Shown: positions 24 through 6,696, counted from the stretch's first letter. The stretch: 6,696 nucleotides of DNA from IMGVR_UViG_3300033830_000011:1-6696; one strand, 5' to 3'. Notes: generated from the sequence alone by a model not told the origin. Numbers and translations: made by a program.

Positions 24-93
24 ATTAGGGGGAAACTTAAAGACCCTTCAGATATCCCCAGTGGGGGACACTCCCACACCCCCAATCCTAAAG
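24..93. repeat. Intergenic modular G/C-run repeat, cluster I
   Basis: Contains GAAACTTAAAGACCCTTCAGA (32-52), GATATCCCCA (51-60), GACACTCCCA (67-76) and CCCCCAATCCTA (79-90). These blocks recur at 814-924 and 5630-5706. Confidence 0.9.
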
Positions 94-129: not shown

Positions 130-762
130 ATGAAAAGACTGTTACTACTGCTTTTAGTTCCTCTCATGGCATCTCTGCTAGTAGTCGCAACAACGGGAGG
201 AGCTGTTTTAGACTGGTCTGACGGTAGTGCCGTTGTAACGATACAACCGCTTTCTGAGACAGTTATAGACGGTTACGTCGTTAATGCGTTTTATAACGGC
301 TCTAATCAAGTAGTCCTCTTAGCTGAGCCCTACTACCAAGGTCAAAACTTACAACAAGTTACGTTCTCTCTCTATGATTATTACACGCATCAATTGATCG
401 GTAACTACACATTACAAGACAACTACACCGTTGTAACAGTACCATCCAACATAACCGTTATCTTCATTTACTTCGATAGTCAGCAATTCGGACCATTCTA
501 CATAACTACAAACGGTGGGAATTATGCACCTCCGCTCCTCGAACAAATGCTGATGTACGTAATTCCGTTATCTTCAGTAGCTTTGTTCGGACTTAGAGCG
601 GGTCTGAGAAACGTAGGACTGGGGTTAATAGTATCGTCAGTGTTTACGACAGCGGAAATGGTAGCACTCGGTGTCTCAAACCTGTGGCTATATGCTATAC
701 CTACACTGGAGGTGTTGTTTGCCATTATACTGTTATGGCATAGCGTTCAAACGTCAGGTTAG
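130..762 (+). CDS. Membrane-anchored surface glycoprotein (putative virion/envelope protein), 210 aa
   Basis: N-terminal signal peptide (MKRLLLLLLVPLMASLLVVA). A beta-rich, Y/N/T-rich ectodomain has 4 N-X-S/T sequons (NGS, NYT, NYT, NIT), followed by about 3 C-terminal hydrophobic helices. The function is inferred. Confidence 0.8.
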   Translation: MKRLLLLLLVPLMASLLVVATTGGAVLDWSDGSAVVTIQPLSETVIDGYVVNAFYNGSNQVVLLAEPYYQGQNLQQVTFSLYDYYTHQLIGNYTLQDNYTVVTVPSNITVIFIYFDSQQFGPFYITTNGGNYAPPLLEQMLMYVIPLSSVALFGLRAGLRNVGLGLIVSSVFTTAEMVALGVSNLWLYAIPTLEVLFAIILLWHSVQTSG

Positions 763-790: not shown

Positions 791-926
791 TGGGGGGATA
801 TAATTCTGTGGGAGAAACTTAAAGACCCTTCAGACACTCCCATTAGGGGGATACCCCCTAAGACCCCCAATGCTAGTGAGGGAAACTTAAAGACCTTTCA
901 GATACCCCCACACCCCCAATGCTAAG
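791..926. repeat. Intergenic modular G/C-run repeat, cluster II (two tandem units)
   Basis: The 21-mer occurs at 814-834 (identical to 32-52) and at 882-902 (1 mismatch). CCCCCAATGCTA occurs at 864-875 and 913-924. There is a perfect inverted repeat TTAGGGGG-ATA-CCCCCTAA at 843-861. Confidence 0.92.
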
Positions 927-956
927 ATTTTTCTTATTTAACACTCTTTTTCTGTC

Positions 957-1700
957 ATGACAACTACAACACTCCCTCCACCGGTAACAGTTCCTGCTCT
1001 ATCGTCATCATCTGCAGTTGTATCATCTTTTTCACCCGACATCCTCGAATACGCTATGATTACAGTCTTCGCAGGAGTGATAATTTACATTGCGTACAAA
1101 CTCTTCCGTAAACCAAGTTACCGTTACTGGTTAAGGCTTATTGACGGTAACGAAGAAAGGGAGATACCGTTAACCAGGATAGACGAGGTCAACTTCGTCA
1201 GTGTGAGGGGGAATATACGTGTTTATAAAGACCCTACAGTTAAGATGATTAAGAGCGGAAGGAGGTACATACTTTACGGCTGGGGTATACAGCCCTACTA
1301 TATTGCAAAGGACCCGCAAACACTTGTCAACGTCGGGATCCGAGACTTAGTACTAAGGGTCGGAAACAAGGAGATAAAATTCGACGGAACGTGGAAGTCA
1401 ATCGTCGATTATTACACTTACCTGATAAAAAGTAGGATTGACACCATGAGAGAACTTACACTTGATACTAACACACAACTCGTCATAGCAGTAGATTATC
1501 CCAGTATATTCAAGAACTCCGTTGAGGACTTACTCCACACTAACGTAAAGCACTCACTGAGACAATTAGAGGAAATAGTAAACATAGAGAAGAACGTAAC
1601 GGCTACAAAGTCTACGGACTTCTCATGGATGAGATGGCTCATAATAGCGTTTATGATAATGGGTGTATTCCTGTTAGCCTTGTCGGTGATACACAAATGA
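957..1700 (+). CDS. Membrane protein with N- and C-terminal TM helices and a central soluble domain, 247 aa
   Basis: T/P/S-rich N-terminus, then a TM segment (YAMITVFAGVIIYIAY) followed by basic KLFRK, and a C-terminal TM segment (WLIIAFMIMGVFLLALSVI). The stop codon overlaps the ATPase start (ATGA at 1697-1700). Confidence 0.8.
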   Translation: MTTTTLPPPVTVPALSSSSAVVSSFSPDILEYAMITVFAGVIIYIAYKLFRKPSYRYWLRLIDGNEEREIPLTRIDEVNFVSVRGNIRVYKDPTVKMIKSGRRYILYGWGIQPYYIAKDPQTLVNVGIRDLVLRVGNKEIKFDGTWKSIVDYYTYLIKSRIDTMRELTLDTNTQLVIAVDYPSIFKNSVEDLLHTNVKHSLRQLEEIVNIEKNVTATKSTDFSWMRWLIIAFMIMGVFLLALSVIHK

Positions 1701-3004
1701 TATGCCGAAAAGTTGTAAGGAACTCCTCAGGGGAAGTACTCAGGAGACCTATCAATTGCAACGAAATTGCCCCTTATACTGACGTTAAGACGGTAGGAGA
1801 AGTCAAAGTAGAGGAGGTCAAGGGATATATAGTAGTTACCGCAGATGACGTATACGTTTACCCGAAAAGTGTATGGGAACGAATACAGTTTTACGTTGAC
1901 TATTTCAGAAAAAACGGTGTCTTCCCAAATCCCGGTTTGCTCTTTACGGGACCACCCGGAACCGGAAAAACAACATTGTCCAGAATAATTACCGAAATGT
2001 TAGGGTTGGACAGAGTTTTCTTCAGTTTCGCTGAAGTCTTAGGACCCTACGTCGGGCAGAGTGAAAAGGGTTTTCAAGCGAAAATCGATGAAGCTATGAG
2101 ATCACGCCCTTCTGCTCTAATAATCGATGAAGCTGACACTTTGCTCATGTCAAGAGAAGTTATGGTACAAAGGATAGGCGTGTCATCTGCAGACATTAAC
2201 ATAAAGTCAATGCTACTCGACACGATGTCCAAGATGAGGGAGAGTGACGTATTGTTTATTGCAATAACCAACATTTCACCATCTCTCATTGACAGTGCGT
2301 TAAAAAGAGAAGGGAGATTCGGTGAACCGGTCTACGTCCCGGTACCAACAAAGGACGCAATAGAGATACTCATAGAAAGGAAGTTTCCGCAACACATTAA
2401 TAAACGGGAAGAGTTAGCGTCAAAGCTCGCTTCATCAATGCAGAACTTCGCTAACATAGTGTCCTATCTGAAAAGATTGGAATACGGCATAGACAGACTT
2501 CCCGAGGAGTCATTACGCGGTTACAGGATAATTTACGTTAAGAAACCGTACAGTGATAGAAGACTTGAGAAGTTTTTTTCCTCACTCGACTACCCTGAGC
2601 TTTACTTCGCGAAAGCAAACCCGGATCTAGCGATACCTGTACTTGCAGCTTATTTCGTTTCTGTCGGTAAAGGGAACGTAGTCGTTTATAACGCAAAGGG
2701 ACTGGAAGAGGCGATAAAAGTAGCTGAAACATATAACGCCGTGCTCATCGTGGACGAGAGGAGCGGGATACCGATAAAGGAACTGTTTCGCGTTGCAAAC
2801 GTCCCGATTGTCGTTGTCGGAGACAATGTTACGGCAAAGGAAGTTTTTCATGTAGACGAATATAACGAAGACATGATAAACATCATCTTCAGTGCGTATA
2901 ACATTAGGGTGACACCGAAGAGATATGCCTTGTCTGATTTGGAAAGGATCGTTTACCACTGTAAAGGAGGTGATGAGAGTTGCGTAAAGAAGTTGAGAGA
3001 GTAG
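1697..3004 (+). CDS. AAA+ ATPase, classic clade (Cdc48/p97/Vps4-like), about 435 aa, with a degenerate C-terminal second AAA-like region
   Basis: Walker A GPPGTGKT (1949-1972), pore loop EVLGPYVGQSEK, Walker B ALIIDEAD, and sensor-1/SRH IAITN..SLIDSALKREGRF. I moved the start from 1625 to ATG 1697 because of the ATGA overlap with the upstream stop and the GGTGA SD at 1685-1689. Confidence 0.92.
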   Translation: MICRKVVRNSSGEVLRRPINCNEIAPYTDVKTVGEVKVEEVKGYIVVTADDVYVYPKSVWERIQFYVDYFRKNGVFPNPGLLFTGPPGTGKTTLSRIITEMLGLDRVFFSFAEVLGPYVGQSEKGFQAKIDEAMRSRPSALIIDEADTLLMSREVMVQRIGVSSADINIKSMLLDTMSKMRESDVLFIAITNISPSLIDSALKREGRFGEPVYVPVPTKDAIEILIERKFPQHINKREELASKLASSMQNFANIVSYLKRLEYGIDRLPEESLRGYRIIYVKKPYSDRRLEKFFSSLDYPELYFAKANPDLAIPVLAAYFVSVGKGNVVVYNAKGLEEAIKVAETYNAVLIVDERSGIPIKELFRVANVPIVVVGDNVTAKEVFHVDEYNEDMINIIFSAYNIRVTPKRYALSDLERIVYHCKGGDESCVKKLRE

Positions 3005-4041
3005 CCGTATTTCTAGGAGCGTTAACATTTGTAAACGGTGTATTATCATTGGAAGTAGCCTCCGTTATAGTGTACATGTTTTACATTCTAGCTGTAGTAT
3101 TCGCTTTCCTTTACCTTGTGAAAGACGACAGAAGGTTTGCTGACTTAATCGTGTTCTTTACGTTTGTCGCCGCATTTACTGCAGTTTCAGTATACAGAGT
3201 CCCATCACAAACGGACGAAGAAAGTCTTGTGTTATATGCGGCTTATCTTTTCAGACACGGGATTAACCCCTATACGGCTAACTTCATCAACGCTTATAAG
3301 ATGTTTCCCGTAGCCGAACCCGTCGTTACTGTTACACTTACTCCCAGTTATTACGTTAACGTGTTCGGTTACCCTGCGTTATATTTCGAGATAGCTTCCG
3401 TAGTGTACCCTCAGATCGTCACGCTTGTTACAACGTTTCTGCTTTACCCCTTTCTGAGGTGGAAGGGTAAGGAGAAGTTATTCTTCATTATAATGCTGAT
3501 AGAAGGGAGCTACTCAGCTTTCACCGGTGGTACGTTTGACATAATATCATTAACTATCGCGGTCATAGCACTTACAACGAAAGGTTGGATCAGGACAACA
3601 TTTATGACGTTGAGCGGTGACATTAAGCAATACACATTACTTTACTTACCGTTTATATGGAAGGATTATTGGGGTAAATGGAAAGAGCTGACAAAGAACA
3701 TCCTCATACCGCTAACCGTTTTTCTAATTCCCAACTTACCCTTCATCTCGTTTAAATGGGCTTTCGACGTATTAGGCCCTCTCACGCAACCCATTGCAAA
3801 CCAAGGTACTTCACTCAGTTTGTTGACTATGATAGGCGTGCCCATTCCGCATATTGCGTATACTATCGCTTTTCTGACGCTCTATGTCGCGTTGTTGGTG
3901 CTGTATAAACCTAACACTAAGTGGAAGTGGATCCTCCCGGCTTTCATCTGGCTCGTGAGTTGGAGGGATTTGAATTATTTCTTATTCTACATAACGGTAT
4001 GGGTGAGCAGTTATGAACTGGAAAGTGCTGGTGATAATTAG
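2980..4041 (+). CDS. Polytopic membrane protein, probable GT-C fold glycosyltransferase (GT87/PMT-like), 353 aa
   Basis: Many hydrophobic helices. The first large loop carries an acidic TDEE motif followed by GINPY and YPALYF, with a later IKQY motif; this pattern resembles lipid-linked-sugar-dependent GT-C enzymes. TTG start with a strong SD, GGAGGTGA, at 2966-2973. Confidence 0.7.
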   Translation: MRKEVERVAVFLGALTFVNGVLSLEVASVIVYMFYILAVVFAFLYLVKDDRRFADLIVFFTFVAAFTAVSVYRVPSQTDEESLVLYAAYLFRHGINPYTANFINAYKMFPVAEPVVTVTLTPSYYVNVFGYPALYFEIASVVYPQIVTLVTTFLLYPFLRWKGKEKLFFIIMLIEGSYSAFTGGTFDIISLTIAVIALTTKGWIRTTFMTLSGDIKQYTLLYLPFIWKDYWGKWKELTKNILIPLTVFLIPNLPFISFKWAFDVLGPLTQPIANQGTSLSLLTMIGVPIPHIAYTIAFLTLYVALLVLYKPNTKWKWILPAFIWLVSWRDLNYFLFYITVWVSSYELESAGDN

Positions 4042-4732
4042 TCTCATTGTACTCGAAATTCTCGCTATCTCTTTATTGTGGAAACCGACATTACCGTTGA
4101 CGGTCTACATCGTAAGGGTCTATGACGTCGGCGATGTAGGGTACTGGGACGTAGTATGTTTGAACGTTACTAACCACGGAAACTCTCCAATTCACCCTAT
4201 TTTCCTACTTAACGAGTTCGGTAGTGAGAAGAGGTGGGTCGTTTTGAGCCAAATCATACCATACGTACCGTATAATTGTACGTTGCCCGTTATTTCACCT
4301 CACTCATGGCGTCTTATCAATATCTCTGCACCATCACCCCTTTACTTCATACCGCCTTTTACACCGATTTATGTACAAGTCTATTCGGTGGGGGATACAC
4401 CCATACCCCCAATGCTCTTTGTAAACTCTCCCGTTTACATAACGCCTAACATAACTAGACCTCTTATCATCAACCCAAACTTTACCGTTCTGTATTATAG
4501 CGGGAAGTATAACGAGGAGTTACCGTGGGGTTGGTACGTCGAACTCGCTCCGGGGACTAAACTTTCTTACCATGACGGCGTTATTGTAAACGGTACAGCG
4601 ATATTTTACCAACCGGTTTTCGACGCGAATGTGACGGTAATCGGTTACAATGTCTCTTACACGGTCTCTGGCAATACACTGTTCATCTACGTCCATGACG
4701 GTTATGTGAGAGGTGTCGTACTTGGGTCGTGA
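4013..4732 (+). CDS. Membrane-anchored/secreted beta-rich glycoprotein, 239 aa
   Basis: N-terminal hydrophobic helix and a V/Y/P/N-rich ectodomain with 8 sequons (NVT, NCT, NIS, NIT, NFT, NGT, NVT, NVS). SD GGTGA at 4002-4006. Confidence 0.8.
   Translation: MNWKVLVIISLIVLEILAISLLWKPTLPLTVYIVRVYDVGDVGYWDVVCLNVTNHGNSPIHPIFLLNEFGSEKRWVVLSQIIPYVPYNCTLPVISPHSWRLINISAPSPLYFIPPFTPIYVQVYSVGDTPIPPMLFVNSPVYITPNITRPLIINPNFTVLYYSGKYNEELPWGWYVELAPGTKLSYHDGVIVNGTAIFYQPVFDANVTVIGYNVSYTVSGNTLFIYVHDGYVRGVVLGS
4388..4416. repeat. Intragenic copy of the G/C-run repeat
   Basis: GTGGGGGATACACCCATACCCCCAATGCT matches 61-89 (GTGGGGGACACTCCCACACCCCCAATCCT) at 25 of 29 positions without gaps. Confidence 0.8.
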
Positions 4733-5054
4733 AATATGTGAAAAATTTGTGAACGACATCATCAAGAAAGCAAAGAGTAAAATATATTATTTCAGCGACA
4801 GAAAGAACGGGTTTTACAGTTACTACGGTGTACAAGCTAAAAAGTTAAAGTACTTCATTGAGGACGATGAGGAGCTAGTGAAACTATGTGAAAAGAAGTA
4901 TGACACGCTGGAAATGTGTGTGTCAAAACTTCTAAATTATTGTGCGGAGAGAGAAAACTACCAACCGGCGATCTACATTTACGGTAGGATATTCTTTAAT
5001 AAACCGATAAACATAGATGAACTCAGGAGGTTGGTACAAAATGTTAGGAGATGA
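4722..5054 (+). CDS. Hypothetical soluble K/Y-rich protein, about 110 aa
   Basis: The ORF overlaps both neighbours in operon fashion. TTG at 4722 with SD GAGGTG (4710-4715) is preferred over GTG at 4713. Confidence 0.7.
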   Translation: MGREICEKFVNDIIKKAKSKIYYFSDRKNGFYSYYGVQAKKLKYFIEDDEELVKLCEKKYDTLEMCVSKLLNYCAERENYQPAIYIYGRIFFNKPINIDELRRLVQNVRR

Positions 5055-5379
5055 GTTGATCGTAACGTTATCGATAGACTTTATTGCGTTGTCGCTTCAG
5101 TTGTATCTCATCAACAAGGATACACCGTTTTATCTTGACGCTCTCATTACGATCTTTCTTGCGATTTTCAACTTCGCTTCATACTTAAACGGTATAATTT
5201 ATGTTGCTGGCGAGAATGAGACAAAGTTAAACAACTCAACAGTTATAATAACGCCTGTTTATAAGCCCGATCCCTTTGCTCCTCTTTTCATGATAGGGTT
5301 CGCTATAACGATAGTATCGGCTTTCCTGCTAATAATAAAAATATTTACGAAAAAAGGAAGTTTCGAATTATTTCCTTAA
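5041..5379 (+). CDS. Small 3-TM membrane protein, about 112 aa
   Basis: Three hydrophobic segments, with a loop ENETKLNNST carrying 3 sequons. ATG 5041 follows GGAGGT (5026-5031); the alternative start is 5017. Confidence 0.75.
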   Translation: MLGDELIVTLSIDFIALSLQLYLINKDTPFYLDALITIFLAIFNFASYLNGIIYVAGENETKLNNSTVIITPVYKPDPFAPLFMIGFAITIVSAFLLIIKIFTKKGSFELFP

Positions 5380-5583
5380 TGTCCTCTCTAAAACAGCACC
5401 GCAGTATGTAGTATCCAGATGTCTTTGTAAAAAGAACACGTTTTTAAATTTTTTACCACATACAGGGCATTTTTTCTCCTTTATCGAACCTAGGATGTCA
5501 ATATTCTTTTTTTCTGCATTCATAATCAGCCATCTCATTCCCAGTAACTTCTTATACCTTGAAACCGCATAAAGTTCTTTCAT
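5368..5583 (-). CDS. Small zinc-finger protein (C2H2/C2HC type), putative transcription regulator, 71 aa
   Basis: CPVCGKKFKNVFFLQRHLDTTYC gives C-x2-C-x3-F-x5-L-x2-H-x5-C. The protein is basic and has a correctly spaced upstream TATA box. Small zinc-finger proteins of this kind are common in crenarchaeal viruses. Confidence 0.85.
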   Translation of the reverse strand: MKELYAVSRYKKLLGMRWLIMNAEKKNIDILGSIKEKKCPVCGKKFKNVFFLQRHLDTTYCGAVLERTLRK

Positions 5584-5620: not shown

Positions 5621-5709
5621 TATTAGGGAGGTACCCCCATTAGAGGGATACTCCCACACCCCCAATCCTAGTTAGGGGAACACCTTCACCCCCCCCCCCC
5701 ATGCTAATA
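5621..5709. repeat. Intergenic modular G/C-run repeat, cluster III
   Basis: GGATACTCCCACACCCCCAATCCTA (5646-5670) matches 66-90 at 24 of 25 positions. It also contains GGTACCCCCA (5630-5639) and a C12 run followed by ATGCTAA (5689-5707). The 21-mer block is absent. Confidence 0.9.
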
Positions 5710-5738: not shown

Positions 5739-5939
5739 ATGGATGTTATTGACATAATTGTCGCATACAACCCCCTATTTTCCCCGGAAAAGGAGAACAT
5801 TATTATGGTACCGCTGGACTACGTAGAAGAAGTTAAACGATTAGCGAAATCACATAACGCAAAGATCCAAATTTTTCAGAAACGAAGGAGTAAATACGCT
5901 TATATAAGGTGGTACTACCCGGGTGAGAAGGATGAGTGA
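5739..5939 (+). CDS. Small hypothetical protein, 66 aa
   Basis: First ORF after cluster III, with an AT-rich TATA-like tract about 25-30 nt upstream. Its end overlaps the next gene start. Confidence 0.65.
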   Translation: MDVIDIIVAYNPLFSPEKENIIMVPLDYVEEVKRLAKSHNAKIQIFQKRRSKYAYIRWYYPGEKDE

Positions 5940-6513
5940 TGATAAACAGCAACAGCAACAACAGCAGACCGGAATCAGAGGGACAAGTGCAAAAACCGTA
6001 GTAGTGAAAGTAAATCCCTTAACATTTGACGACAATCACGGACTTGTAAAACTCGTAAAACAACCTTTATCGAAGATAAACCTCCTTGAGGAGTTAAAAG
6101 ATGATGACGTTATCAATAACATCAACAAACTTAAACAGTTTGAGAGTGCGGTCATTGCTGCACTGCTTGAGGACCTGCAACAGGAAGTACGTTATATCAC
6201 AGTACCTTCACTTATACTGCCTTTGTTTAAGAACTCAGTGAGGAACGTAATCAGGAACATGATAGTTATTTCAGACGCAGTTTACACCCACGTCCTCAGT
6301 AAGATAAGCAAAGACGTAGACGATAGTGAGAAATTAATGGAAGACTTAAAGCTTATCCAGCATTATCTTGACATTATAAACAGCTTCTACCTTGCAGTCG
6401 ATAACATAAGCATTGTAATTGTGAACCTCCTGAATACTAACTTACCTGCCGATAGGGCACCGCGTCTGATTAACGAAATATTGACGGGGTACGACATATG
6501 GAAACAACATTGA
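5932..6513 (+). CDS. Hypothetical alpha-helical protein with an N-terminal polyQ tract, about 193 aa
   Basis: ATG 5932 is preceded by SD GGTGA (5922-5926) and is preferred over GTG 5923. The composition is amphipathic and helical (L/I/D/N/K-rich). Confidence 0.8.
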   Translation: MSDDKQQQQQQQTGIRGTSAKTVVVKVNPLTFDDNHGLVKLVKQPLSKINLLEELKDDDVINNINKLKQFESAVIAALLEDLQQEVRYITVPSLILPLFKNSVRNVIRNMIVISDAVYTHVLSKISKDVDDSEKLMEDLKLIQHYLDIINSFYLAVDNISIVIVNLLNTNLPADRAPRLINEILTGYDIWKQH

Positions 6514-6696
6514 TAGTGGGAACGGCAGGAGTTGTAACAGCCACAGTAACTACTACAGTCCTACTTTTAAAGAGAAAGAAAAAGAAACCAGTTTACACTG
6601 AAAGAAACGTAGTGTGGTGGATTGATAAACACCTAACTCCCAAAATGCTCACTGCAACAAAACCCAGAGTCGTTGATAAGGTATACGGGCAATATG
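6498..6696 (+). CDS. Partial CDS (runs off the window end), N-terminally membrane-anchored protein
   Basis: Not in the ORF track. ATG 6498 opens METTLIVGTAGVVTATVTTTVLLLKRKKKKPVYTERNVVWWIDKHLTPK... with no stop before 6696. It overlaps the upstream stop, has GGGGT upstream, and shows a hydrophobic anchor followed by KRKKKK. Confidence 0.75.
   Translation, partial: METTLIVGTAGVVTATVTTTVLLLKRKKKKPVYTERNVVWWIDKHLTPKMLTATKPRVVDKVYGQY

What the first reader, a model, noticed from the sequence alone, without database searches (positions are those of the whole stretch)
957..5379. Translationally coupled operon: membrane protein, Cdc48/Vps4-like ATPase, GT-C enzyme and glycoproteins
Seen: six consecutive overlapping genes, each downstream gene with an SD motif, and four of the six encoding membrane proteins. 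Known: classic-clade AAA+ ATPases such as Vps4/CdvC and Cdc48 unfold or extract membrane-associated proteins, and GT-C enzymes glycosylate on the outer membrane face using lipid-linked donors. Inference: a self-contained module for envelope morphogenesis/egress or cell-surface remodelling (for example superinfection exclusion by receptor glycosylation). I do not recognise this combination as a described system.
Basis: partly seen in the sequence, partly recalled or inferred. Interest (0 to 1): 0.65.

Follow-up and report, generated by a model that had tools for sequence, protein, structure and literature searches.

The report
Archaeal virus operon with split glycosyltransferase
Six overlapping genes of a hot-spring archaeal virus form one real operon whose conserved core is a membrane sugar-transferring enzyme (GT-C type) split into two proteins and co-expressed with a Cdc48-like ATPase; this enzyme type was found in no paper on archaeal viruses in the library searched.

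Summary
Window 957-5379 carries six same-strand genes overlapping by 4, 25, 29, 11 and 14 nt. All five downstream genes have a Shine-Dalgarno 5-mer. The first has a TATA-like box instead. All tested genes are under strong purifying selection.

The window is a fragment of a Sulfolobales virus of the YNP1/YNP2 lineage. g2 is a single-module classic AAA ATPase, nearest Cdc48. It is not Vps4 or FtsH. g3 is a GT-C-fold protein: all 16 best structural matches are GT-C enzymes, a family profile matches GPI mannosyltransferase I, and distant relatives match Pfam GT87.

So g3+g4 is a split enzyme. This pair stays adjacent in every lineage examined that has both genes: the YNP lineage, two more distant metagenomic relatives, and SMV1-3.

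The six-gene "self-contained system" is not supported. In a divergent relative g1 and the ATPase lie 7 kb apart and no GT-C gene lies in the 21 kb examined. The acceptor and the ATPase's role remain inferred. Verdict: a real operon and a new variant of a known enzyme kind, of moderate interest.

The parts
930..943 (+). TATA-like box (TTTCTTATTTAACA) 14-27 nt upstream of the g1 ATG. It is the likely promoter of a leaderless operon transcript.
   Evidence: Sequence read. g0 (130) and g8a (5739) have the same arrangement of an AT-rich box and no SD motif. Inference only: no transcript data.
957..1700 (+). g1, 247 aa. It has a Ser/Thr/Pro-rich N-terminal tail, TM1 (about 29-50), a positively charged stretch (RKPSYRYWLR), a conserved central domain of about 175 aa (probably cytoplasmic), and a C-terminal TM (227-245). 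Function unknown.
   Evidence: A3, 14 homologs, down to 35% identity in L022. No match in Pfam, NCBIfam, PADLOC or PDB. The AF2 model is poor (pLDDT 56).
1685..1689 (+). SD motif GGTGA for g2, inside the 3' end of g1.
1697..3004 (+). g2, 435 aa. A soluble, single-module classic AAA ATPase. It has Walker A (GPPGTGKT), Walker B (IIDEAD), a pore loop (YVG), sensor-1 (ITN) and Arg fingers (REGRFGE). It also has a small N-domain of about 55 aa and an extra C-terminal alpha/beta region of about 125 aa.
   Evidence: PF00004 at 1.5e-24. The best solved relatives are Cdc48, VAT and p97 at 5.6e-39. NCBIfam ranks CDC48 > PAN > FtsH > CdvC. The motifs are conserved in A4 down to 27% identity. The ATG at 1697 matches the YNP1/YNP2 annotation.
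2965..2973 (+). SD motif AGGAGGTGA for g3, inside the 3' end of g2.
2980..4041 (+). g3, 353 aa. The catalytic membrane module of a GT-C-fold glycosyltransferase (GT87/PIG-M-like). Asp79 in the first outer loop (TDEE) is invariant, as are P97, Y98, T117, P132, G276, R329 and Y333.
   Evidence: AF2 pTM 0.83. The top 16 VIA matches are all GT-C, Z 13.7-7.9. ESM Atlas clusters carry GT87, PIG-U, ALG3, PIG-M and MptA_B. A profile search found 245 relatives, and some pass the Pfam GT87 cut-off. The broad profile hits GPI mannosyltransferase 1 at 6.8e-7.
4001..4006 (+). SD motif GGGTGA for g4, inside the 3' end of g3.
4013..4732 (+). g4, 239 aa. It has an N-terminal TM anchor and an extracytoplasmic beta-rich domain with 8 N-glycosylation sequons. 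It is the split-off C-terminal domain of the GT-C enzyme.
   Evidence: The g4 HMM hits the segment directly after the GT-C part in 16 long relatives: P0287 433-578 at 4.8e-10, P0237 at 3.5e-9, P0344 426-572. Reversed decoys gave no hit. It follows g3 in the YNP lineage, L015-L017 and SMV1-3. It is homologous to SMV1 gp27 at 2e-13. The complex prediction gave weak support (0.52 against a best control of 0.00).
4710..4715 (+). SD motif GAGGTG for g5, inside the 3' end of g4.
4722..5054 (+). g5, 110 aa. Soluble, function unknown.
   Evidence: phrog_33209 covers residues 4-113 of the longer ORF. YNP2 has ATG at this start. dN/dS is 0.06. No match in Pfam, NCBIfam or PADLOC.
5026..5031 (+). SD motif GGAGGT for g6, inside the 3' end of g5.
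5041..5379 (+). g6, 112 aa. Three predicted TM segments, with sequons in the loop at 59-67. Function unknown.
   Evidence: A homolog is retained in L022 at 32% identity. dN/dS is 0.065.

Best explanation
Window 957-5379 is one operon of a Sulfolobales virus of the YNP1/YNP2 (SYV) lineage. The promoter and transcript are inferred. The SD-coupled overlaps are shown.

It is a composite, not a single machine. Its conserved functional core is a two-chain GT-C glycosyltransferase of the GT87/PIG-M kind.

- g3 is the multi-pass catalytic module. An invariant Asp79 sits in the first outer loop, and Arg329 is also invariant.
- g4 is a TM-anchored extracytoplasmic domain. In single-chain relatives this domain is fused to the C-terminus of the GT-C module.

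By analogy with GT87, MptA/B, PIG-M and ALG3 enzymes, the pair most likely takes a dolichyl-phosphate-hexose made by the host and transfers the sugar to an acceptor on the outer face of the host membrane.

The likeliest acceptors are membrane-inserted viral structural proteins or their N-glycans during assembly. Host surface glycans are the main alternative.

g2 is a soluble hexamer-type Cdc48-like AAA unfoldase with an intact pore loop. It is co-expressed with the two-TM protein g1. Its substrate is unknown. It may remodel or extract membrane-embedded viral or host proteins.

g5 and g6 are conserved and of unknown role. The link between the g1-g2 part and the GT-C part is co-expression in this lineage only.
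For: Operon:
- The overlaps, the SD motifs (about 1e-8) and the absence of an SD motif at g1 next to a TATA-like box.
- The order g1..g6 is kept in 8 IMG/VR loci, in YNP1 and YNP2, and in L015 at about 60% aa identity.
- dN/dS is 0.03-0.07.

Virus identity:
- 81% nt identity to YNP1; the record is a viral one.
- The YNP1 genome has an integrase and a virion structural protein.

GT-C assignment:
- Fold match: Gpi14 Z 13.7, ALG3 13.0, ALG6 12.2, ArnT 11.6, PimE 11.0, each with 230-280 aligned residues. Below the 16 GT-C matches the list drops to unrelated short helix bundles.
- Atlas matches reach TM 0.56-0.79.
- There are 245 profile relatives.
- The GT87 gathering cut-off is passed by relatives P0229 and P0344, and NCBI names one such cluster "glycosyltransferase 87 family protein".
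- The broad profile hits PDB GPI mannosyltransferase 1 at 6.8e-7.
- Asp79 is invariant in 34 sequences at 21-62% identity and in SMV and ATV homologs.

Split enzyme:
- g4 HMM hits lie directly after the GT-C part of long relatives.
- P0344 combines GT87, a g3-like part and a g4-like part in one chain.
- g3 and g4 are always adjacent.
- Complex prediction gave weak support: 0.52 against a best control of 0.00.

Donor type: the fused relative P0287 lies in a bacterial cluster with a GT2 gene, MptA_B, GT87, PMT_2 and PIG-V-like genes.

ATPase.
Against: - No enzymatic, glycan or transcript data exist, and no RNA run holds the sequence.
- g3 itself hits no Pfam or NCBIfam model directly.
- A GT-C fold does not prove catalysis: PIG-U has this fold and is not known as a transferase.
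- The acceptor is a guess.
- No virus-encoded Dol-P-sugar synthase or flippase was recognised in the window.
- The complex score is of the class that is "more often wrong than right unless likely beforehand".
- The C-terminal domain of ATV ORF545 is not detectably homologous to g4 (hhalign P 0.05; no HMM hit).
- The roles of g1, g2, g5 and g6 are unresolved.
Confidence: 0.6

Rival explanations
1. One reading: all six genes form one self-contained machine. The membrane-tethered AAA ATPase (through g1) unfolds or extracts membrane proteins that the GT-C enzyme then glycosylates, driving envelope morphogenesis or egress.
For: - Tight SD-coupled overlaps, including an ATGA junction between g1 and g2 and a 25-nt overlap between g2 and g3.
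- Fixed gene order throughout the YNP1/YNP2 lineage and in L015.
- In SMV1-3 and ATV an unrelated AAA+ ATPase (MoxR type) also lies next to the GT-C homolog.
- YNP1 lacks a detectable MoxR or vWA gene. This could mean one ATPase has replaced the other.
Against: - In L022 (ATPase 42% identical) the g1 homolog and the ATPase lie 7 kb apart, a different soluble 219-aa gene overlaps the ATPase start, and no GT-C gene lies in the 21 kb examined.
- L016, from the same sample, has GT-C+g4 with other neighbours.
- The ATPase relatives in HAV2 and L024 have unrelated neighbours.
- GT-C+g4 occurs without this ATPase in five other contexts.
- There is no evidence that g1 binds g2. That pair was not tested, and the g1 model is poor.
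Confidence: 0.12
2. Host-surface conversion. The split GT-C enzyme modifies host S-layer or pilus glycans (the receptors) to exclude superinfecting viruses, as phage GtrC enzymes modify O-antigen.
For: - The GT-C fold, the outer-face catalytic loop, and the precedent of phage gtrABC (general knowledge).
- YNP1 carries an integrase, so a carrier state is possible.
- S-layer glycans are discussed as receptors for spindle-shaped viruses (PMC13437554).
Against: - The gene sits in a long same-strand block that also holds the virion structural protein gene. It is not next to the integrase, as gtr morons usually are.
- No GtrA- or GtrB-like partner was recognised.
- The pair is conserved over wide divergence together with structural-region neighbours.
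- There are no data on lysogeny or exclusion.
Confidence: 0.2
3. g3 is a non-catalytic GT-C-fold scaffold, like PIG-U in GPI transamidase. It serves as a membrane platform for g4 or other viral proteins and not as an enzyme.
For: PIG-U chains are among the best fold matches (Z 11.3-11.7). PIG-U-carrying clusters are found in the Atlas search. There is no direct Pfam GT hit for g3.
Against: - Asp79 in the first outer loop and Arg329 are invariant from viral to cellular relatives at 21% identity.
- Relatives pass the GT87 cut-off.
- The profile hits the catalytic GPI mannosyltransferase I, not PIG-U, in the PDB.
- A fused relative lies in a glycan-synthesis cluster.
Confidence: 0.08

Closest known systems
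GT87 / MptA-B type polyprenyl-phosphate-mannose-dependent mannosyltransferases (e.g. mycobacterial PimE) and uncharacterised archaeal and bacterial "GT87 family" membrane proteins
   Same: - GT-C fold (PimE Z 11.0).
- Distant relatives of g3 pass the Pfam GT87 cut-off.
- An acidic residue is conserved in the first outer loop.
- A fused relative lies among MptA_B, GT87 and GT2 genes.
   Different: - g3 itself does not reach any Pfam threshold.
- The enzyme is virus-encoded and split into two chains (g3 + g4).
- Donor, acceptor and sugar are unknown.
GPI mannosyltransferase I (PIG-M/Gpi14), which needs a single-pass partner (PIG-X/Pbn1; from general knowledge)
   Same: - It is the best structural match (9wno, Z 13.7, 267 residues).
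- It is the only significant sequence-profile match in the PDB (6.8e-7).
- It has a two-chain layout of a multi-pass catalytic subunit plus a single-TM partner with an outer or lumenal domain.
   Different: - No GPI pathway is implied.
- g4 was not compared with PIG-X or Pbn1.
- The resemblance in subunit layout is recalled from memory, not tested.
ATV ORF545, and SMV1 gp26 + gp27 with their SMV2-4 homologs (Bicaudaviridae)
   Same: - These are true homologs of g3 (29-35% identity).
- SMV gp27 is a true homolog of g4 (2e-13).
- The gene order and overlap are the same.
- ATV ORF545 has a C-terminal TM plus a sequon-rich beta domain in one chain.
   Different: - They are annotated only as membrane protein, putative transporter or SecF.
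- They lie divergently next to a MoxR-type ATPase and a vWA protein, not downstream of a classic AAA ATPase.
- The ATV C-terminal domain is not detectably related to g4.
Phage GtrC-type serotype-converting glucosyltransferases (gtrABC)
   Same: They are virus-encoded GT-C-type enzymes that use lipid-phosphate-sugar donors on the outer face of the host membrane (general knowledge).
   Different: - Those viruses are bacterial and the genes sit at the attachment site as lysogenic-conversion morons with GtrA and GtrB partners.
- No such partners were recognised here.
- No sequence relation was tested.
Cdc48 / VAT / p97, and HAV2 ORF506 ("AAA-ATPase, CDC48-type")
   Same: - A classic AAA module with Walker A and B, an aromatic-hydrophobic-Gly pore loop and Arg fingers.
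- The best PDB and NCBIfam matches are Cdc48.
- HAV2 ORF506 is the nearest named viral relative (30% identity over 82%).
   Different: - There is one AAA module, not two.
- There is no CDC48_N double-psi barrel match.
- The N-domain (about 55 aa) and the C-terminal alpha/beta region are unique and shared only with viral or metagenomic relatives.

Membership tests
GT-C glycosyltransferase superfamily | Integral membrane protein with about 8-13 transmembrane helices | tested here: met
   The AF2 model has about 12 long helices. The hydropathy scan finds multiple segments.
GT-C glycosyltransferase superfamily | Conserved GT-C core fold | tested here: met
   The top 16 of 48,161 chains are all GT-C (Z 13.7-7.9, 228-280 aligned residues), followed by a drop to short helix bundles. 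Foldseek PDB top hits are PimE, ALG12, PIG-U and ALG3, at weak E-values. Atlas TM is 0.56-0.79.
GT-C glycosyltransferase superfamily | Conserved acidic residue in the first extracytoplasmic loop | tested here: met
   Asp79 is invariant in A1, in the SYV/SMV/ATV alignment and in the 34-sequence A5. The outer location is inferred from the positive-inside rule and the model. A catalytic role was not tested.
GT-C glycosyltransferase superfamily | Direct match of the protein to a curated GT-C family model (Pfam or NCBIfam) | tested here: not met
   No Pfam or NCBIfam hit for g3 or for any of the 19 close homologs at E up to 10.
GT-C glycosyltransferase superfamily | Significant profile-level sequence relation to an established GT-C enzyme | tested here: met
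   Profile A5 hits PDB GPI mannosyltransferase 1 at 6.8e-7. Relatives found with profile A1 pass the GT87 cut-off: P0229 at 26.8 bits and P0344 at 31.1 bits, against a cut-off of 25.
GT-C glycosyltransferase superfamily | Transfer from a lipid-phosphate-linked sugar donor | not testable with these tools
   This needs a biochemical assay. The only context evidence is from the fused relative P0287.
Cdc48/p97/VAT | Classic AAA module with Walker A/B, pore loop and second region of homology | tested here: met
Cdc48/p97/VAT | Two tandem AAA modules (D1, D2) | tested here: not met
   There is a single PF00004 stretch (residues 105-239 of the 459-aa ORF) in a 435-aa protein. The score of 76 bits is far below the CDC48 cut-off of 803.
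Cdc48/p97/VAT | N-terminal CDC48_N double-psi barrel domain | tested here: not met
   No PF02359 or PF02933 match in g2, although cellular Cdc48 hits carry both.
Vps4/CdvC | N-terminal MIT domain and membership of the CdvC equivalog | tested here: not met
   No MIT match. The CdvC model scores 34 bits against a cut-off of 650.
FtsH (the annotation of the YNP1/YNP2 homolog) | N-terminal TM helices and a C-terminal M41 peptidase domain | tested here: not met
   No TM segment and no Peptidase_M41 match. The FtsH model scores 41 bits against a cut-off of 600.
Phage gtrABC-type glycan conversion module | GtrA flippase and GtrB (GT2) genes beside the GT-C gene | tested here: not met
   No GtrA or GT2 Pfam match in any window protein at E up to 0.1.

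The most novel reading that the evidence does not exclude
The ATPase lies next to the GT-C gene in two lineages: a classic AAA ATPase here and a MoxR ATPase in SMV and ATV. If that position is functional, these large spindle-virus relatives carry a virus-encoded, ATP-driven membrane-protein processing line. An ATPase would mobilise membrane-embedded structural proteins, and the split GT-C enzyme would glycosylate them on the outer face. This would prepare virions for the extracellular shape changes known from ATV and SMV1.
Probability: 0.1. Interest if true: 0.8.

Novelty: new variant of a known kind. Interest (0 to 1): 0.5.

Why it matters
Glycosylation of archaeal virions is well known. The virus-encoded glycosyltransferases discussed in the review consulted (PMC13437554) are not described as GT-C; that the described ones are soluble GT-A or GT-B enzymes acting in the cytoplasm is from general knowledge.

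A conserved GT-C enzyme in the YNP1/YNP2 lineage, in SMV1-4 and in ATV would mean these viruses also direct sugar transfer on the outer face of the host membrane. That is where capsid proteins, S-layer and pili sit.

The finding gives a testable function to a gene pair that is annotated only as "membrane protein", "putative transporter" or "SecF". It offers a natural split form of a GT-C enzyme for structural work. It also corrects the FtsH label on the ATPase.

The literature searches found no paper that links archaeal viruses to GT-C enzymes. That library lacks most subscription journals, so the claim of novelty is limited to what was searched.

Tried and rejected
- g1, g4, g5 and g6 have no Pfam, NCBIfam, PADLOC or PDB sequence match. 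PHROGs gives only families of unknown function.
- g1: the Atlas feature search returned only unnamed viral clusters. AF2 with 14 homologs gave pLDDT 56 and pTM 0.30, so no fold search was made.
- g4: the Atlas feature search scored 0.80 or less, which is uninformative.
- g3: the profile of close homologs had no PDB hit. Foldseek against the PDB gave only weak E-values. BFVD returned only the protein's own family.
- ATV ORF545 C-terminal domain against g4: BLAST, hhalign (P 0.05-0.07) and the g4 HMM all failed to show homology.
- SMV1 gp25, the gene upstream of the SMV GT-C, showed no similarity to g1 or g8.
- The pattern scan of 185,579 species genomes for g3 relatives found none. The all-against-all profile search later did find relatives.
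- MoxR and vWA homologs were not found in YNP1, L007, L009, L015 or L022 by tblastn or by Pfam on large YNP1 proteins.
- The complex prediction for g3+g4 gave weak support only: 0.52, best control 0.00, two of three runs. The mark was reached by 58 of 80 solved complexes and 2 of 110 mismatched pairs. At 0.60 or under, only 7 of those 80 solved complexes passed, and both mismatches that passed fell there.
- No RNA run holds the stretch.
- Rfam and ARAGORN found nothing in the window.
- The YNP1 virion structural protein had no PDB sequence hit.

Full report
**What the window is.** The 6696-bp window is a complete IMG/VR record classed as a linear fragment, about 18% complete. It is 81% identical in DNA to Sulfolobales virus YNP1 and 78% identical to YNP2 over most of its length. 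Both are unclassified circular genomes of 35-41 kb from Yellowstone. They carry an integrase, replication genes and a small virion structural protein. Eight further IMG/VR contigs and many metagenomic proteins belong to the same lineage.

**Checking the observation.** The six genes are real and lie where the finding says.
- Refined coordinates are g1 957-1700, g2 1697-3004, g3 2980-4041, g4 4013-4732, g5 4722-5054 and g6 5041-5379. Starts were fixed by homolog annotation and alignments.
- Successive overlaps are 4, 25, 29, 11 and 14 nt.
- Each of the five downstream starts is preceded at -16..-5 by at least five bases of GAGGTGA. Only 2.6% of window positions have such a match, so five of five is about 1e-8.
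- g1, like g0 and g8a, lacks an SD motif. It has an AT-rich TATA-like box 16-30 nt upstream of its ATG. This fits leaderless first genes.
- g1, g3, g4 and g6 have hydrophobic segments. g2 and g5 have none.
- dN/dS against YNP2 is 0.03-0.07 for g2-g6 and for the upstream gene g0. g1 was not computed against YNP2 because it is frame-shifted there. Its coding status rests on conservation across 14 homologs.

Co-transcription could not be tested. No RNA run holds the sequence.

**The ATPase (g2).**
- g2 matches PF00004 at 1.5e-24.
- Its best solved relatives are the D2 and D1 modules of Cdc48, VAT and p97 at 5.6e-39.
- NCBIfam ranks CDC48 above PAN, FtsH and CdvC, all far below their cut-offs.
- Walker A and B, the YVG pore loop, sensor-1 and the Arg fingers are conserved down to 27% identity.
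- It has one AAA module, no CDC48_N, MIT or M41 domain, and no TM segment.
- It is therefore a classic-clade unfoldase-type ATPase nearest Cdc48. It is not a member of Cdc48, Vps4 or FtsH proper.
- Its nearest named relative is ORF506 of Hyperthermophilic Archaeal Virus 2.

**The GT-C protein (g3).** No curated family model matches g3 or its close homologs, and the close-homolog profile has no PDB hit. The assignment rests on the following.
- An AF2 model built from 19 homologs is confident (pTM 0.83).
- An exhaustive structural comparison puts 16 GT-C enzymes at the top. They include GPI mannosyltransferase I (Z 13.7), ALG3 (13.0), ALG6 (12.2), PIG-U, ArnT, PimE (11.0), PMTs, AftA, ALG12, STT3, AglB, PglB and ALG9. 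Each aligns 228-280 residues. Below them the list drops to unrelated short bundles.
- The ESM Atlas search finds clusters carrying GT87, PIG-U, ALG3, PIG-M and MptA_B.
- A profile search of 1.84 billion representatives finds 245 relatives. Most are 400-1000 aa with the g3-like part at the N-terminus.
- Several of these relatives match Pfam GT87, and two pass the gathering cut-off. NCBI names one such cluster a GT87 family protein of a Thermoplasmatota archaeon.
- A broader profile of 34 sequences hits GPI mannosyltransferase 1 in the PDB at 6.8e-7.
- Asp79 is invariant in all alignments, as are P97, Y98, T117, P132, G276, R329 and Y333. By the positive-inside rule and the model, Asp79 lies in the first outer loop.

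**g4 is the other half of the enzyme.**
- g4 has an N-terminal TM anchor, a beta-rich outer domain and eight sequons. Several sequons are conserved in homologs at 41% identity and in SMV1 gp27.
- An HMM of the g4 family hits 16 of the long g3 relatives, always directly after their GT-C part. Examples are P0287 433-578 at 4.8e-10 and P0237 at 3.5e-9. Reversed decoys gave no hit.
- P0344 combines a GT87 match, a g3-like part and a g4-like part in one chain.
- g3 and g4 are therefore a split form of single-chain enzymes.
- They are adjacent in every lineage examined that has both genes: the YNP lineage, L015, L016, L017 and SMV1-3.
- ATV ORF545 has a comparable C-terminal TM plus a sequon-rich domain. 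Homology to g4 could not be shown.
- The complex prediction gave weak support: 0.52 against a best control of 0.00. That is a class of pass that is only credible with prior evidence.
- The fused relative P0287 lies in a bacterial cluster with a GT2 gene and MptA_B, GT87, PMT_2 and PIG-V-like genes. This fits polyprenyl-phosphate-sugar chemistry.

**Is it one six-gene system?**
- Within the YNP lineage and in L015, at about 60% identity, the order is fixed.
- In L022 the ATPase is 42% identical, but the layout differs. The g1 homolog lies at 2024-2809 and the ATPase at 10001-11407. Homologs of g6, g7 and g8 lie between them. A different soluble gene overlaps the ATPase start. No GT-C gene lies in the 21 kb examined.
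- L016, from the same sample as a second copy of that ATPase, has GT-C+g4 beside a g0 homolog and an ankyrin gene.
- The ATPase relatives in HAV2 and L024 have other neighbours.
- The cluster is therefore a lineage-specific arrangement of at least two separable units.
- One point remains in favour of a link. SMV1-3 and ATV have an unrelated MoxR-type ATPase next to the GT-C homolog, while YNP1 has no detectable MoxR or vWA gene.

**Mechanism.**
- Shown: the operon architecture, the ATPase motifs, the GT-C fold and family relation, the invariant Asp79, and the split-gene relation of g3 and g4.
- Inferred: a dolichyl-phosphate-hexose donor, action on the outer membrane face, and the acceptor.
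- I favour viral membrane-inserted structural proteins or their glycans as acceptors. The operon lies in the long same-strand block that also holds the virion protein gene. Host-surface conversion is the main alternative.
- The roles of g1, g2, g5 and g6 are open.

**Novelty.**
- The genes exist in deposited genomes, but with uninformative or wrong names: FtsH, SecF, putative transporter, membrane protein.
- Searches of the held literature found no paper linking archaeal viruses to GT-C enzymes.
- This is a new variant of a known enzyme kind. It is not a new kind of system.

Noticed in passing
window 28-90, 810-875, 878-924, 5627-5700; partial copy 4392-4417: A G5/C5-rich element (core GGGGGATACCCCCTAAGACCCCCAATGCTA) sits just upstream of the TATA-like boxes of g0, g1 (two tandem copies) and g8a.

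The same element also occurs inside coding sequence:
- in frame in a loop of g3 after WKD229 in several relatives (insert RGVPPKTPNASGGHPHTPN);
- at the N-terminus of g4 in L007, L008 and L013;
- as a 10-residue insert (VGDTPIPPML) in this window's g4 that relatives lack;
- in reverse orientation in YNP1, where it breaks the g3 frame.

It looks like a small mobile or recombination-prone element.
   Followed up: partly
window 834-875; L032 1201-1242: Forty-two bases of that element are 95% identical to a stretch in the N-terminal part of the integrase gene of Sulfolobus virus Kamchatka 1 and three other fuselloviruses. From general knowledge, this is the region where fusellovirus attP sites lie. 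No tRNA or Rfam match was found in the window.
   Followed up: partly
L001 6735-7824 (YNP1 gp13-gp15): In the YNP1 RefSeq record the GT-C gene is annotated as three separate "membrane protein" CDS. The cause is a frame change at the element insertion, plus ambiguous bases. It is intact in the window, in YNP2 and in most metagenomic relatives.
   Followed up: yes
window 130-762 (+): g0 (210 aa) has a signal-peptide-like N-terminus, four sequons and two C-terminal TM segments, with dN/dS 0.03. Its position varies: directly upstream of g1 here, about 9 kb away in L015, and divergently adjacent to the GT-C gene in L016. It is a candidate viral surface glycoprotein.
   Followed up: partly
window 5368-5583 (-): g7 is a 71-aa C2H2 zinc-finger protein on the opposite strand. 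It overlaps the end of g6 convergently by 12 nt. Its homolog in L022 is on the same strand as its neighbours.
   Followed up: no
window 5739-6695 (+): A second SD-coupled string, g8a-g8-g9, starts at its own TATA-like box. g8 has an N-terminal poly-Gln run. The SMV1-3 proteins just upstream of their GT-C genes also begin with Gln-rich runs, but no similarity was detected.
   Followed up: partly
window 2700-3004 (g2 residues about 335-435): The extra C-terminal alpha/beta region of the ATPase has a strand-helix-strand pattern. LIVDE and VVVGDN recall the Walker B and sensor-1 strands, so it may be a degenerate second nucleotide-binding-like domain. This comes from reading the sequence only.
   Followed up: no
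P0092 (homolog of g1): One g1 homolog (80% identity) is deposited as a protein of a Thermofilum sp. MAG on a 25-kb contig. This is probably a viral contig binned with a cellular genome, or a provirus.
   Followed up: no
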